NCBI RefSeq assembly: GCF_039654945.1
Contig: NW_027361688.1
Coordinates: 930,001 to 977,164, forward strand
Reading direction: 5' to 3'
DNA: 47,164 bases
Source: Dendrobates tinctorius
Lineage: Eukaryota
The position numbers were made by a program, and so were the translations under genes. Every line of letters begins with the position of its first letter. Within the stretch, counting starts at the first letter, position 1. Shown here one piece after another: positions 12,278-20,807 of this stretch. The notes beneath the pieces are model-generated. The model saw only the letters and a program-made list of their open reading frames with translations. It did no database searches and was not told the origin of the DNA.

Positions 12278-12554
12278 GCATGAATGCCGTCACTGAAGAG
12301 CTGAGATTGCTTATATGGCCAAAACGCGCAACCACTGCCTCAATGGGTACAGTGCGCTAGAAAGTCTGCAGTCATCAGTGTCCTATCTGCCAAAGCGCAG
12401 GGTACAAAGATGCTGTAGAGTCTCCAGTGGGAGGAAACAATGACCAAGCCCATCTGTGGCCACCACTAGAGGGAGCTCACAGCACAGGAATGTATACAGA
12501 GTCTGAGTTCCATACTATACATAGCACTCTGTATTTCACTCCCTCATACATCAC

Positions 12555-12712
12555 CATCATAATCCGCAGCGCTTTACTGATATCACTGTCACCGTCCGGA
12601 CTCACAGTCAAAGCTCCTCATCAGTATGTTTGTGTGTGCGAGAAAACAGGAGGGAAACCACACAAACACGGGGAGAACATACAAACTCCTGCAGATGTTG
12701 TCCTTGGTGGGT
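12555..12712 (-). mobile_element. V-SINE-like fragment with L2-derived tail
   Basis: Minus strand GAGTTTGTATGTTCTCCCCGTGTTTGTGTGGTTTCC (V-domain core) and GTAAAGCGCTGCGGA tail. Confidence 0.65.
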
Positions 12713-12714
12713 AC

Positions 12715-17000: not shown

Positions 17001-20000
17001 ATTGTGGCTGAGATTCCGGTAGAATTCGGTCCGATGAGCTTTTTTCAGGCCTGTGCAAAGGCCAAAATCTGAGAGCTTGACGTGACCCTGCAAGTAGAAG
17101 AAGAGTTGGAGGTCTCCACTATACACTACACCTCCCCAAACTGTAGCAGCAGATAACAGGGAGCAATAGCTCATTATCTGTGATGTTAGACGGTCCCATA
17201 AGGGCGAGAGACAGTAAAGCAGCGGCTGCACCGGATCTCACCTTCGCGTCCAGCAGGAGATTGTCCGGCTTGATGTCTCGGTGGATGAAGCCCAACTGGT
17301 GAATGGCATCAATGGCCAAGACCGTCTCTGCAATGTAGAACTGCGTCTCCTCCTCCGACAGCGTGTCCTTCTTCATCAGCAGCGTCATCATGTCACCTAC
17401 ACACCACAGAGCGGAATAGTGAGTGCAGCTCTGGAGTATAATACAGGATGTAACTCAGGATCAGTAATGTAATGTATGTACACAGTGACTGCACCAGCAG
17501 AATAGTGAGTGCAGCTCTGGGGTATAATACAGGATGTAACTCAGGATCAGTAATGTAATGTATGTACACAGTGACTGCACCAGCAGAATAGTGAGTGCAG
17601 CTCTGGAGTATAATACAGGATGTAACTCAGGATCAGTAATGTAATGTATGTACACAGTGACTGCACCAGCAGAATAGTGAGTGCAGCTCTGGGGTATAAT
17701 ACAGGAGGTAACTCAGGATCAGTAATGTAATGTATGTACACAGTGACTGCACCAGCAGAATAGTGAGTGCAGCTCTGGGTATAATACAGGATGTAACTCA
17801 GGATCAGGAATGTAATTTATGTACACAGTGACTGCACCAGCAGAATAGTGAGTGCAGCTCTGGGGTATAATACAGGATGAAACTCAGGATCAGTAATGTA
17901 ATGTATGTACACAGTGACTGCACCAGCAGAATAGTGAGTGCAGCTCTGGGGTATAATACAGGATGTAACTCAGGATCAGTAATGTAATAATAATAATAAT
18001 AATAATAATCTTTATTTATATAGCGCCAACATATTCCGCAGCGCTTTACAGTTTAACAGTTTCAAAACACAAGTCATAAGTAACAACGCTAACAATACAA
18101 TAATTAAAGCAAAATAAGACGAAATAAGACGACCCTGCTCGTGAGAGCTTACAATCTACAATGAGGTGAGGGAGATACAGAGTACAGGTGTGTATTTACA
18201 ATGGTGGATTTACAATGAAGGTCCAGCCATCTTGCGGGAGTCAAGGATGGATGGAGATAGTGAATGGGCTACACACGCACACTTACACAGAGAATGACTT
18301 TGATTAGTGAATGTGATAGGCCGCTCTGAACAGGTGTGTTTTGAGGGAGCGCCTAAAACTATGCAAATTGTGGATAGTCCTGATTTCTTGGGGTAGAGCA
18401 TTCCAGTGGATAGGAGCAGCACGGGAGAAGTCTTGGAGTCGGGAGTGGGAGGTACGGATTAGTGCAGAGGTTAGTCGAAAGTCGTTTGCAGAGCGCAGCG
18501 ATCGGCTAGGCCGATAGACAGAAATGAGAGAAGAGATGTAAGGGGGTGCCGCACTGTAGAGAGCTTTGTGGGTGAGAACAAGTACTTTGAATTGGATCCT
18601 ATAATGAATGGGCAGCCAATGTAAGGACTGGCGAAGAGCGGACGCGTCCGAGTACCGATTACCCAGATGGACGATCCTGGCCGCTGCATTAAGTATGGAC
18701 TGGAGAGGGGATAGTCGAGCGACGGGGAGGCCAATTAATAGAGCGTTGCAGTAATCCAGGCGAGAGTGGATGTAATGTATGTACACAGTGACTGCACCAA
18801 CAGAATAGTGAGTGCAGCTCTGGGGTATAATACAGGAGGTAACTCAGGATCAGTAATGTATGTACACAGTGACTGCACCAGCAGAATAGTGAGTGCAGCT
18901 CTGGGGTATAATACAGGATGTAACTCAGGATCAGGAATGTAATGTATGTACACAGTGACTGCACCAGCAGAATAGTGAGTGCAGCTCTGGAGTATAATAC
19001 AGGATGTAACTCAGGATCAGTAATGTAATGTATGTACACAGTGACTGCACCAGCAGAATAGTGAGTGCAGCTCTGGAGTATAATACAGGATGTAACTCAG
19101 GATCAGTAATGTAATGTATGTACACAGTGACTGCACCAGCAGGATAGTGAGTGCAGCTCTGGAGTATAACACAGGATATAATTGATGACACTACCTCCGG
19201 GTAAGAACTCCATGATCAGATACAGGTTACTTTTGTCCTGGAAGCTGTAGAACATTTTCACCACCCAGGCCCCGTCCGCTTCCACCAATATGTCTCTCTC
19301 GGCTCGGATGTGCGCCACCTATGGGGGGGGGGGGGATGTAGAGACTGTGACTTGTACAGGATGAGACACAATGACTGCAGAAAAATCCCATAGACACAGA
19401 CAGCAGTGATCTATAGACCCCGCCGTGCTTCACCTGCTCCTTCTCCAACATGTCTGCTTTCCTGAGGATCTTCATTGCATAGATGTGGCCCGTGTCCTTC
19501 TTCTGAACAAGTCGCACCTACAATGGGATAATATTATTTTCCCCATGCGCCCACATTGGCGATCACTACTGAACGGCTGGAGCTCTATGACTGGACGCAC
19601 CTCCCCGAAGGCTCCTCTCCCGATAACCTTCAATGACTCAAAGTCATCCAGGCCCAGCCTCGTCCTCTTCAGGCGCAGGAACTCAGTCTCTTTCCGTGCG
19701 TGCTGCGACCGCCGCAGCCTTTTCTGCAGGAATTAATCATAATTTAAGTGAAAGGTGCATTTCCTAGTCCTGACACTAGAGGGCAACATGGGACTAAGAG
19801 GGTGCAGTTCTCAGTCCTGACACCAGAGGGCAGATAGTTTAATAACGCAGTGTGCAGTTCTCAATCCTGAAACCAGAGGGCAGACAAGGGAATAATGGAG
19901 GGAGCAGTTCTCAGTCCTGACACCAGAGGGCAGACAAGGGAATAATGGAGGGAGCAGTTCTCAATCCTGAAACCAGAGGGCAGACAAGGGAATAATGGAG

Positions 20001-20807
20001 GGAGCAGTTCTCAGTCCTGACAGCAGAGGGCAGACAAGGGAACAATGGAGGGAGCAGTTCTCAGTCCTGACACCAGAGGGCAGACAAGGGAGTAATGGAG
20101 GGAGCAGTTCTTAGTCCTGACACCAGAGGGGAGCAGACAAGGGAATAATGGAGGGTGCAGTTCCCAGTCCCGACACCAGAAGGGAGCAGACAAGGGAACA
20201 ATGGAGGGAGCAGTTCTCAGTCCTGACACCAGAGGGCAGACAAGGGAGTAATGGAGGGAGCAGTTCTTAGTCCCGACACCAGAGGGGAGCAGAAAAGGGA
20301 ATAATGGAGGGTGCAGTTCCCAGTCCTGACACCAGAGGGCAGACAAGGGAATAATGGAGGGAGCAGTTCTCAGTCCCGACACCAGATGGGAGCAGACAAG
20401 GGAATAATGGAGGGAGCAGTTCTCCGTCCTGACACCAGAGGGCAGACTCACATCGTCGTCTGCTAGTCCCTCTTCGTCCATGGCGATCTCCAACTTCTTT
20501 TGCCTGTTGGAAAGGGAATCTCCCGTTATGCTCCTGCTCGGCTCTGGGCTATCACCATTGTATTACATCGCAACCAGTCTCCAGCTGATTGTTAACTACA
20601 ACTCCCAGCATGCCCTGTGCCATCTGTTAGAGCATGCTGGGAGTTGTAGTGCAGCAGGGTGCGGCCCCGGTACCTGGTCTCGCGCTCCTCGTGCTGCAGG
20701 ATCAGGTTGCTGTAGAAGGTCTCCAGCGTCAGTTTGGCCACCGTCACCCGCTCCCGGGTGTGATTACTCATGGGGAAGGCAGTGGCGTTCGTGGCCGTCA
20801 TCGCCAT
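13918..20807 (-). CDS. STK38L: Serine/threonine kinase 38-like (NDR2), full spliced CDS span, 13 coding exons, 1395 nt, 464 aa
   Basis: Exons join through GT-AG introns into one frame, [29 protein letters not shown]...HRDIKPDN...DFG...[14 protein letters not shown]...[31 protein letters not shown]. Exon lengths 134/52/123/84/124/155/103/62/118/124/96/92/128 sum to 1395. N- and C-termini are STK38L-type rather than STK38-type. Confidence 0.97.
14121..14418. repeat. 29-bp CpG-rich minisatellite, STK38L intron 13
   Basis: GAGGCGGCAGAGAGCGGCCGAGCGAGCGA x~10. Confidence 0.95.
14527..14618 (-). CDS. STK38L: STK38L exon 13
   Basis: [30 protein letters not shown]; CAG/GTAAGT; 92 nt. Confidence 0.95.
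14686..15135 (-). repeat. 57-bp minisatellite, STK38L intron 12
   Basis: GAGCTCCCCCTAGTGGTGACTGCAGACAGGATCTTATCATGTATCTCTGTATACAGG x8. Confidence 0.95.
15161..15256 (-). CDS. STK38L: STK38L exon 12
   Basis: [32 protein letters not shown]; CAG/GTACAG; 96 nt. Confidence 0.95.
15394..15517 (-). CDS. STK38L: STK38L exon 11
   Basis: [42 protein letters not shown]; CAG/GTGCGT; 124 nt. Confidence 0.95.
15624..15741 (-). CDS. STK38L: STK38L exon 10
   Basis: [39 protein letters not shown]; CAG/GTACGG; 118 nt. Confidence 0.95.
15929..15990 (-). CDS. STK38L: STK38L exon 9
   Basis: [21 protein letters not shown]; CAG/GTAGGT; 62 nt. Confidence 0.95.
16062..16902 (+). repeat. 57-bp minisatellite, STK38L intron 8, reverse complement of the intron-12 array
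   Basis: CTGTCTGCAGCCACCACTAGGGGGAGCTCCCTGTATACAGAGATACATGATAAGATC x~15, plus one inverted arm at ~16881-16902. Confidence 0.95.
16985..17087 (-). CDS. STK38L: STK38L exon 8
   Basis: [34 protein letters not shown]; CAG/GTAAGT; 103 nt. Confidence 0.95.
17242..17396 (-). CDS. STK38L: STK38L exon 7
   Basis: [52 protein letters not shown] (catalytic loop); TAG/GTGAGA; 155 nt. Confidence 0.96.
17413..19182. repeat. 86-bp satellite array 2, STK38L intron 6, interrupted by an L2
   Basis: Same unit and orientation as array 1; ~7 units left and ~5 right of the L2. Confidence 0.95.
17989..18769 (-). mobile_element. L2 LINE 3' fragment with (ATT)n tail and 7-bp target-site duplication
   Basis: [15 protein letters not shown]...[10 protein letters not shown]...[13 protein letters not shown]...[13 protein letters not shown]...LKTHLF; ATGTAAT at 17982-17988 and 18770-18776. 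Confidence 0.93.
19195..19318 (-). CDS. STK38L: STK38L exon 6
   Basis: [41 protein letters not shown]; TAG/GTAGTG; 124 nt. Confidence 0.95.
19434..19517 (-). CDS. STK38L: STK38L exon 5
   Basis: [28 protein letters not shown]; TAG/GTGAAG; 84 nt. Confidence 0.95.
19601..19723 (-). CDS. STK38L: STK38L exon 4
   Basis: [41 protein letters not shown] (Gly-rich loop); CAG/GTGCGT; 123 nt. Confidence 0.95.
19756..20447 (+). repeat. 50-bp minisatellite, STK38L intron 3
   Basis: GGCAGACAAGGGAATAATGGAGGGAGCAGTTCTCAGTCCTGACACCAGAG x~14. Confidence 0.95.
20452..20503 (-). CDS. STK38L: STK38L exon 3
   Basis: [17 protein letters not shown]; CAG acceptor, GTGAGT donor; 52 nt. Confidence 0.95.
20595..20650. 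repeat. 56-bp hairpin (MITE core) with 19-bp perfect arms, STK38L intron 2
   Basis: ACTACAACTCCCAGCATGC-N18-GCATGCTGGGAGTTGTAGT. Confidence 0.85.
20674..20807 (-). CDS. STK38L: STK38L exon 2 (first coding; exon starts 20818 with 11 nt of 5'UTR)
   Basis: CAG acceptor 20819-20821, ATG at 20807, [48 protein letters not shown] donor. Confidence 0.95.

What the first reader, a model, noticed from the sequence alone, without database searches (positions are those of the whole stretch)
12458..20447. STK38L is packed with minisatellites whose unit carries a CTCF-like motif (~40 copies, oriented blocks)
Seen: four arrays have a CTCF-like core in nearly every unit. They are the 3'UTR 40-mer x6 (GCCACTAGAGGGAGC, minus), intron 12 57-mer x8 (ACCACTAGGGGGAGC, minus), intron 8 57-mer x15 (plus) and intron 3 50-mer x14 (GACACCAGAGGGCAG, plus). 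The two left arrays point left and the two right arrays point right, so they diverge around exons 9-12. Established: the CTCF core is CCASYAGRKGGCRS, orientation sets loop-extrusion blocking, and divergent clusters mark boundaries. Inference: tandem amplification may have built a copy-number-variable insulator inside a kinase gene, between MED21/STK38L and the ARNTL2 promoter. The 40/57-mers have A instead of C after the G-run, so affinity is uncertain.
Basis: partly seen in the sequence, partly recalled or inferred. Interest (0 to 1): 0.8.

Follow-up and report, generated by a model that had tools for sequence, protein, structure and literature searches.

The report
Frog minisatellites carrying CTCF-type sites
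Four short tandem repeats inside a frog's STK38L kinase gene each repeat a sequence that closely matches the docking site of the genome-folding protein CTCF, but most of them belong to a repeat family present in thousands of copies across the genome, so this is probably a by-product of repeat spread and not a purpose-built chromatin boundary; binding is untested.

Summary
Four arrays (40-mer at 12715-12940, 57-mer at 14687-15135, the same 57-mer inverted at 16065-16859, 50-mer at 19766-20447) carry 38 CTCF matches at p<=1e-5, against 0.16 expected. Strands are -,-,+,+ as stated. Composition-matched shuffles almost never reach these scores.

The feared A after the G-run is not disqualifying. 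The 57-mer shares the 14-mer ACCACTAGGGGGAG with a human IL3 insulator site shown to bind CTCF. The 50-mer also has an upstream GCAGTT at that site's spacing.

The reading as a purpose-built insulator is weakened:
- The 40/57-mer belongs to a very high-copy repeat family, also present in a related species.
- The window and the STK38L coding span are each 47% tandem repeat.
- Five further arrays in or beside the gene lack the motif.
- A -,-,+,+ order has a 1-in-16 chance.
- The "3'UTR" array lies beyond the main poly(A) site.

Occupancy, insulation and copy-number variation could not be tested. Most likely these are repeat-borne sites able to bind CTCF, placed by repeat dynamics. The scan has already noted similar arrays elsewhere in this genome (TERF2, HGD and others).

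The parts
12460..12478 (+). Solo copy of the 40/57-mer module (CCACCACTAGAGGGAGCTC), inverted relative to the 40-mer array 240 bp away
   Evidence: Weight-matrix score 18.2 bits. Flanks aligned. Unchanged in the orthologous contig of organism B (record 13).
12715..12940 (-). 40-mer minisatellite with 6 CTCF-grade cores (TCGCCACTAGAGGGAGCTC). It lies downstream of the main poly(A) site, inside a possible long 3'UTR form.
   Evidence: TRF. 19.5 bits per unit. 0 of 5000 shuffles reach the score. High-copy family. Poly(A) signals.
14687..15135 (-). 57-mer minisatellite in intron 12, 8 units; 7 cores at p<=1e-5
   Evidence: Intron 12 is spliced out from 14618 to 15159 in RNA contigs.
16065..16859 (+). 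The same 57-mer family in inverted orientation in intron 8: 15 units, including two 38-bp short units that keep the core; 14 cores at p<=1e-5
16832..16903 (.). Foldback formed by the last 57-mer unit and an inverted solo module (16883-16901, minus strand)
   Evidence: DNA fold -21.2 kcal/mol, z = -4.3, 0 of 200 shuffles fold as well. Solo site scores 17.6 bits.
19766..20447 (+). 50-mer minisatellite filling intron 3 (682 of 728 nt), 14 units of which 8 are strong. Each unit has an upstream GCAGTT 10 nt before the core. The array ends inside the exon 3 donor GTGAGT.
   Evidence: Spacing compared with the published IL3 probe.
13918..20807 (-). STK38L coding exons 2-14 (ATG at 20807, stop codon at 13918-13920). 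Array-free introns are 83-187 nt.
   Evidence: Peptide anchors and splice sites. Pkinase matches. N-terminal exon hits PDB 5xqz_C 'Serine/threonine-protein kinase 38-like'. Spliced contigs.
14121..14418 (.). 29-mer GC-rich minisatellite in intron 13, not CTCF-like (context)
   Evidence: 3.95 bits.
17410..19181 (.). Two 86-mer satellite blocks in intron 6, separated by a transposon-like insert; not CTCF-like (context)
   Evidence: -4.6 bits.
13241..13246 (-). ATTAAA, probable main poly(A) signal of STK38L
   Evidence: RNA contig ends at 13228 and depth falls there.
12253..12277 (-). Two AATAAA signals, probable distal poly(A) site of a minor long 3'UTR form that would include the 40-mer array
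   Evidence: Low-depth RNA contigs at 12300-12687.

Best explanation
These are ordinary minisatellite expansions for this genome, sitting in a compact-gene region saturated with repeats. Their units happen to carry, and so multiply, CTCF-grade binding sites.

The 40-mer and the two inverted 57-mer arrays are local arrays of one genome-wide, very high-copy repeat family. Its conserved module is ..CTGTCTGCAG-CCACCACTAG(A/G)GGGAGCTC.. The 50-mer in intron 3 is a separate family restricted to this species.

Inferred, not shown: the arrays arose by replication slippage or unequal exchange. That is the mechanism proposed for frog recombination-rich regions.

The 57-mer core shares the 14-mer ACCACTAGGGGGAG with a validated human CTCF site, the consensus units lack CpG, and the CTCF motif works the same way in Xenopus. 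Some units are therefore likely able to bind CTCF where chromatin allows (inferred). That would give dense, oriented clusters of sites. Their position and orientation in STK38L most likely reflect repeat dynamics and not selection for an insulator.
For: Motif quality:
- 38 hits against 1.55 expected.
- 18-19.7 bits for the 40/57-mers and 15.8 bits for the 50-mer.
- Shuffles reach the score 0/5000, 0/5000 and 7/5000 times.
- Composition-matched shuffles predict 0.007 CTCF-grade families among the 16 repeat families in the window. Two independent ones are seen, P = 2.4e-5.

Binding plausibility:
- The IL3 +2.9 kb site with core CCACTAGGGGGAGACA binds CTCF in EMSA and blocks an enhancer.
- Xenopus TAD borders show convergent CTCF motifs when scanned with the mammalian motif.
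- The 57-mer and 50-mer consensus units are CpG-free.
- In 23 aligned 57-mer units the 14-bp core has 6 variant cells of 322. The degenerate flank positions and the 3' tail vary most, and the short 38-bp units keep the core.

Repeat-family origin:
- 8552 contigs of one DNA run lay on 5.1 kb, and 5230 of them fit two places.
- Summed depth is 36,000-145,000 on array bins against 3-7 on unique bins.
- 57 and 109 contigs run on past 12459 and 12940 into flanks that resemble the 57-mer's own upstream part.
- 875 contigs of organism B also match (all).

Context:
- 47% tandem repeat in both the window and the gene.
- In X. tropicalis, satellites, recombination rate and CTCF-motif density are correlated (r = 0.54 for the motif), and arrays derive from transposon pieces.
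Against: - No occupancy, accessibility or Hi-C data exist for this locus.
- High-copy repeats are often silenced.
- The 40- and 57-mers lack a correctly spaced upstream motif. Loss of that motif cut binding 3-fold and abolished enhancer blocking in the IL3 study.
- Conservation of the core within arrays may only reflect homogenisation of young copies.
- Summed contig depth is not a true copy number.
- No transposon hallmarks were found: no tRNA head, no Rfam match, no clear target-site duplication. The origin of the family stays open.
- That two unrelated families in one gene both carry the motif is not explained by a single lucky family.
Confidence: 0.55

Rival explanations
1. A real chromatin boundary. 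The arrays are occupied by CTCF and cohesin. The left, minus-strand blocks stop loop extrusion coming from the ARNTL2 side and the right, plus-strand blocks stop it from the STK38L promoter and MED21 side. Array length tunes boundary strength.
For: - Divergent block order with about 38 strong sites.
- Several tandem sites insulate better than one: 3 copies gave full blocking, and 4 tandem sites were needed in the Sox2 screen.
- The 50-mer has a bipartite site at the validated spacing.
- The four strongest solo motifs in the window all point towards the arrays: 1726+ and 3471+ on the left, 38354- and 38670- on the right.
Against: - The same repeat family is scattered across the genome in very high copy, so its presence here needs no selection.
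- The orientation pattern has a 1/16 chance, and 4/4 convergent solo sites also 1/16.
- Two solo modules point the wrong way.
- The sites lie inside a highly transcribed gene.
- The 40/57-mers lack the upstream motif tied to insulation.
- There are no occupancy or contact data.
Confidence: 0.13
2. Sequence resemblance only. The arrays are not bound in vivo because they are silenced, nucleosome-covered or too weak without the upstream motif. Any effect comes from DNA or RNA structure, for example the inverted 57-mer arrays pairing in the pre-mRNA around exons 9-12.
For: - The family is high-copy, and such repeats are commonly silenced.
- The upstream motif is absent from the 40/57-mers.
- Inverted arrays of 449 and 795 nt flank exons 9-12.
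- Frog tandem repeats in general are enriched in AGGG, TGGG and ACAG, and modestly so here. G-rich cores are therefore favoured for reasons unrelated to CTCF.
Against: - Dinucleotide-matched shuffles do not reproduce the scores.
- The core matches a validated site over 14 nt.
- CpG-free cores escape direct methylation block.
- Spliced contigs show normal removal of introns 12 and 13, and no back-splice joint between 15160 and 15991 was among the joints listed. However, only 15 of 170 joints were shown.
Confidence: 0.25
3. Cause and effect run the other way. Bound CTCF sites are fragile or recombination-prone places that seed minisatellite birth in this frog, which would explain why unrelated repeat families carry the motif.
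For: - Two unrelated families in one window, P = 2.4e-5.
- 46 earlier notes on this genome mention CTCF-like repeats, and two follow-ups report a single site in other frogs amplified here (not checked by me).
- CTCF-motif density tracks recombination rate in Xenopus.
- TOP2B associates with CTCF and cohesin at domain borders (title only).
Against: - The 40/57-mer arrays are explained more simply by spread of one family.
- No orthologous single-copy site could be examined for intron 3.
- The earlier notes are unchecked and subject to reader bias towards a familiar motif.
Confidence: 0.07

Closest known systems
Repeat-borne CTCF site expansions in mammals (SINE B2 and other transposons carrying a CTCF motif)
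   Same: A CTCF-grade motif is embedded in a high-copy, lineage-restricted repeat, so that repeat spread multiplies potential sites (papers listed).
   Different: Here the motif is carried in 40-57-bp tandem units and not in dispersed single-copy SINE insertions. No transposon hallmarks were found. Binding is untested.
CTCF-binding tandem repeats DXZ4, Firre and ICCE on the mammalian X
   Same: Tandem arrays with one CTCF site per unit, where orientation matters for long-range contacts (papers listed).
   Different: Those units are hundreds of bases to kilobases long, the loci are single, and CTCF binding has been shown. These units are 40-57 bp, the family is genome-wide, and occupancy is unknown.
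Human IL3 +2.9 kb insulator CTCF site (PMC12885311)
   Same: It shares the 14-mer ACCACTAGGGGGAG with the 57-mer, including the A after the G-run. Its upstream GCAGTT lies 10 nt before the CCA, as in the frog 50-mer.
   Different: It is a single site. The frog 57-mer and 40-mer have TGCAG only 3 nt before the CCA (CTGCAG-CCA-CCACTAG), which is not the validated spacing.
Frog recombination-rich 'extended subtelomere' minisatellites (Bredeson et al. 2024, PMC10794172)
   Same: Very high tandem-repeat density, arrays built from pieces of dispersed repeats, modest AGGG/TGGG/ACAG enrichment, and a published correlation of CTCF-motif density with recombination.
   Different: The chromosomal position of this window is unknown. 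That paper does not describe minisatellite units that are themselves CTCF sites.

Membership tests
Vertebrate CTCF binding site | Stringent match to the core motif (ZF3-7 site) | tested here: met
   18-19.7 bits (p about 1.5e-7) for the 40/57-mers and 15.8 bits for the 50-mer. Shuffles reach the score 0/5000, 0/5000 and 7/5000 times. The 14-mer is shared with a validated site.
Vertebrate CTCF binding site | Occupancy by CTCF in vitro or in vivo | not testable with these tools
   No ChIP, CUT&RUN or ATAC run for this organism was found among the listed runs.
Insulator-grade bipartite CTCF site | Upstream ZF9-11 motif at the correct spacing from the core | tested here: inconclusive
   The 50-mer has GCAGTT-N10-ACACCAG, the same spacing as the IL3 probe. 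The 40- and 57-mers do not, because their TGCAG lies only 3 nt before the CCA.
Divergent-CTCF TAD boundary | Clusters of sites in divergent orientation | tested here: met
   Strands are -,-,+,+. The pattern has a 1/16 chance and two solo copies point the opposite way.
Divergent-CTCF TAD boundary | Insulation in contact maps and cohesin co-occupancy | not testable with these tools
   No Hi-C, Micro-C or RAD21 data were accessible.
Repeat-borne CTCF motif expansion (SINE B2-like) | Motif embedded in a high-copy repeat dispersed through the genome | tested here: met
   For the 40/57-mer: 8552 contigs laid, array bins at 36,000-145,000 summed depth against 3-7 on unique bins, and the family is also in organism B. 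For the 50-mer this is unclear.
Repeat-borne CTCF motif expansion (SINE B2-like) | Transposon hallmarks (tRNA-derived head, terminal repeats with target-site duplication) | tested here: not met
   No tRNA and no Rfam match. Inverted module pairs exist at 12460/12940 and 16834/16901, but without a clear target-site duplication.
CTCF-binding macrosatellite (DXZ4/Firre type) | Large unit (hundreds of bp to kb) at a single locus, with demonstrated CTCF binding | tested here: not met
   Units are 40-57 bp and the family is genome-wide. Binding is untested.
Copy-number-variable minisatellite (VNTR) | Different unit numbers among individuals at this locus | tested here: inconclusive
   Short-read contigs stop at every array, so none spans one. 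The DNA runs listed for this species (organism A) that are marked as DNA come from one sample.

The most novel reading that the evidence does not exclude
In this frog, CTCF sites and minisatellites are mechanistically coupled. Either bound CTCF sites seed tandem amplification, or a satellite family has spread more than ten thousand CTCF-competent sites. Array length variation would then be a major, fast-evolving source of chromatin-boundary variation. The divergent STK38L arrays would be one working example, separating ARNTL2 from STK38L and MED21.
Probability: 0.12. Interest if true: 0.75.

Novelty: new variant of a known kind. Interest (0 to 1): 0.42.

Why it matters
Suppose the units bind CTCF. 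This genome would then show a third route, besides SINEs and X-linked macrosatellites, by which repeats multiply architectural-protein sites: short-unit minisatellites that place a site every 40-57 bp and can change in number quickly. That would make boundary strength a copy-number trait, and it could be tested in a vertebrate with natural allelic series.

For this locus alone the significance is modest. The arrays look like local members of a genome-wide family, and the scan has already flagged similar arrays elsewhere in the same genome.

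Tried and rejected
- Chance or composition as the explanation: rejected by dinucleotide shuffles.
- The A after the G-run disqualifies the site: rejected by the matrix score and the validated IL3 core.
- Hairpin-prone units drive the expansion: not supported. 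Array dimers fold no better than shuffles (z = -0.2, -2.0, +1.9). Only the array-end foldback stands out.
- Fetching other copies of the family:
  - an exact-pattern scan of metagenome contigs gave 0 hits;
  - a protein-word search with an array reading frame gave none;
  - look-ups of our earlier findings by sequence were blank;
  - a full-text search for the unit sequence gave 0 papers.
- Rfam and tRNA scans of the window: nothing.
- Orthologous STK38L introns of other frogs: not obtained. The only route needed a full-length protein query, which exists here only as separate exons.
- ARNTL2 exons or promoter: not identified in 1-5200.
- Species name: the dyeing poison frog comes from an earlier follow-up note. 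Run names were coded, so I did not verify it.

Full report
**What is there**

Tandem Repeats Finder reports 25 separate array intervals in the 47-kb window, falling into about 16 unit families and covering 47% of it. Four of these arrays are the ones in the finding:
- a 40-mer x5.6 at 12715-12937;
- a 57-mer x8.1 at 14687-15135;
- a 57-mer x13.6 at 16065-16859, whose unit is the reverse complement of the previous one;
- a 50-mer x13.5 at 19766-20447.

The gene is STK38L on the minus strand. I placed coding exons 2-14 from peptide anchors and splice sites (ATG at 20807, stop codon at 13918-13920). Exon pieces hit Pkinase, and the N-terminal exon hits PDB 5xqz chain C, 'Serine/threonine-protein kinase 38-like'. 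Spliced contigs from RNA-like runs of two species join exactly at six of my intron boundaries. MED21 lies on the same strand from 42440 to about 38700.

**Is the CTCF likeness real?**

Strands are -,-,+,+. Within 12458-20447 there are 38 hits at p<=1e-5, where 0.16 are expected.
- Dinucleotide shuffles of each unit reach the observed score in 0/5000, 0/5000 and 7/5000 trials.
- Across the 16 repeat families of the window, shuffles predict 0.007 families at 15.8 bits or more. Two unrelated families reach it, P = 2.4e-5. The other families do not resemble CTCF sites.

**The A after the G-run**

A 2026 paper on the human IL3 insulator gives the core CCACTAGGGGGAGACA for a site that binds CTCF in EMSA and blocks an enhancer. 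It shares the 14-mer ACCACTAGGGGGAG with the frog 57-mer. In its probe sequence the upstream element GCAGTT lies 10 nt before the CCA. The frog 50-mer has GCAGTT-N10-ACACCAG, the same spacing.

The 40- and 57-mers have TGCAG only 3 nt before the core, so they are core-only sites. In that study, loss of the upstream element cut binding about 3-fold and abolished enhancer blocking.

Xenopus TAD borders show convergent CTCF motifs when scanned with the mammalian motif, so the motif can be carried over to frogs. The 57- and 50-mer consensus units contain no CpG, so direct methylation block of the core is not expected (established knowledge).

**Variation within the arrays**

In 23 aligned 57-mer units the 14-bp core shows 6 variant cells of 322. 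The three degenerate flank positions and the 3' tail vary most, and two 38-bp short units keep the core. In the 50-mer array the two diverged edge units keep the upstream-plus-core part but differ in the spacer. This fits constraint on the site. Homogenisation of young repeats would give a similar picture.

**What the arrays are**

I laid contigs of four public runs on 12300-17400.
- Unique DNA is covered by single contigs at depth 3-7 in the DNA run. The 40-mer and 57-mer bins collect thousands of contigs: 8552 were laid, and 5230 fit two places. Their summed depth is 36,000-145,000.
- 57 contigs stop matching just before 12459 and 109 just behind 12940. Their loose flanks are reverse complements of each other and read like the 57-mer's own upstream part (..ATAAAATTCTGKCTRCCTGCAG).
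- The family majority has CACCAC where the local 40-mer has CGCCAC.
- 875 contigs of a second species (organism B) also match.

The 40/57-mer is therefore a genome-wide, very high-copy repeat family, not something built at this locus. Summed contig depth is not a copy number, so I say only 'thousands or more'.

Solo modules at 12460(+) and 16883(-) are inverted relative to the neighbouring arrays. The second forms a strong foldback with the last unit (z = -4.3). I found no tRNA head, Rfam match or clear target-site duplication, so the origin of the family is open.

Words of the 50-mer are held by several runs of the same species but hardly at all by organisms B and C. It is thus a younger family, restricted to this species. 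Whether it is single-locus is unknown.

**Context**

Introns without arrays are 83-187 nt. With arrays removed, the gene would be tiny. The coding span is 47% tandem repeat, the same as the window.

This matches the picture drawn for frog recombination-rich regions: dense satellites, arrays derived from pieces of dispersed repeats, and expansion by unequal exchange. In X. tropicalis, CTCF-motif density itself correlates with recombination rate (r = 0.54; median 28 against 11). The tetramers AGGG, TGGG and ACAG are only 1.2-1.5 times enriched in the arrays here.

The published genome paper for the dyeing poison frog does not mention satellites or tandem repeats. The species name comes from an earlier follow-up note and I did not verify it.

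- The 40-mer array lies 500 nt beyond the likely main poly(A) site. That site is ATTAAA at 13241-13246, an RNA contig ends at 13228, and depth falls 50-400-fold. Only a minor long form ending at AATAAA 12253-12277 would contain the array.
- Only 8 of the 14 50-mer units are strong.
- Four arrays in the order -,-,+,+ have a 1/16 chance.
- Copy-number variation could not be assessed, because contigs break at every array and the only DNA runs of this species come from one sample.
- The ARNTL2 promoter was not located.

**Verdict**

The most likely account is that repeat dynamics placed many sites able to bind CTCF inside STK38L. Part of them may be occupied. A selected insulator is possible but unsupported.

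The scan has already noted comparable arrays on other DNA of this genome (TERF2, HGD, acadm, myo7a). The interest therefore lies in the genome-wide phenomenon more than in this locus.

Noticed in passing
14687-15135 and 16065-16859: The two 57-mer arrays are inverted copies flanking exons 9-12 (403 nt of exon), a geometry that favours back-splicing or double-stranded RNA in the pre-mRNA. No exon 12-to-exon 9 joint was among the 15 of 170 joints listed.
   Followed up: partly
1726-1744(+), 3471-3489(+), 38354-38372(-), 38670-38688(-): The four strongest solo CTCF motifs of the window (16.8-19.8 bits, with the canonical GGGGGCGC type at 3471 and 38670) all point towards the STK38L arrays. This is the convergent arrangement expected for loops anchored there. 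The chance of 4 out of 4 is 1/16.
   Followed up: no
17410-19181; also 8577-11806 and 39254-42254: One 86-mer satellite occurs in three places. In STK38L intron 6 it is split by an insert of about 760 bp that carries a transposon-tail reading frame (18304-18786, minus strand). The 3-kb block at 39254-42254 lies inside MED21, between its first two coding exons.
   Followed up: partly
12640-12712: A fragment of a widespread SINE-like element (..GGGGAGAACATACAAACTCCTGCAGATGTTGTCCTTGGTGGG..) abuts the 40-mer array. About 100-110 contigs per end in the DNA run (110 and 106 at the best-supported places) continue it with a shared consensus on both sides.
   Followed up: partly
14181-14351: The GC-rich 29-mer array in intron 13 had zero depth in all four runs, including the DNA run that probably gave the assembly. 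This may be a filter or a sequencing dropout. It cannot be read as absence.
   Followed up: no
16065-16859; 26957-27305; 29165-29720; 32661-32832: The 57-mer holds two perfect 10-bp palindromes, GGGAGCTCCC and CTGTATACAG. The TGTATACA core of the second recurs in three other minisatellite families of the window, which hints at a shared source sequence.
   Followed up: no
20446-20451: The exon 3 donor GTGAGT overlaps the last unit of the 50-mer array, so 682 of the 728 intron nucleotides are array. Splicing is nevertheless normal in the mRNA contigs seen for the neighbouring introns.
   Followed up: partly
12383-12705: A contig of organism B aligns to the STK38L 3' flank at about 93% identity. 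It keeps the solo module at 12460-12478 unchanged, so this copy predates the split of the two species. With about 2.3 differences expected in 31 nt, the conservation is not significant.
   Followed up: partly
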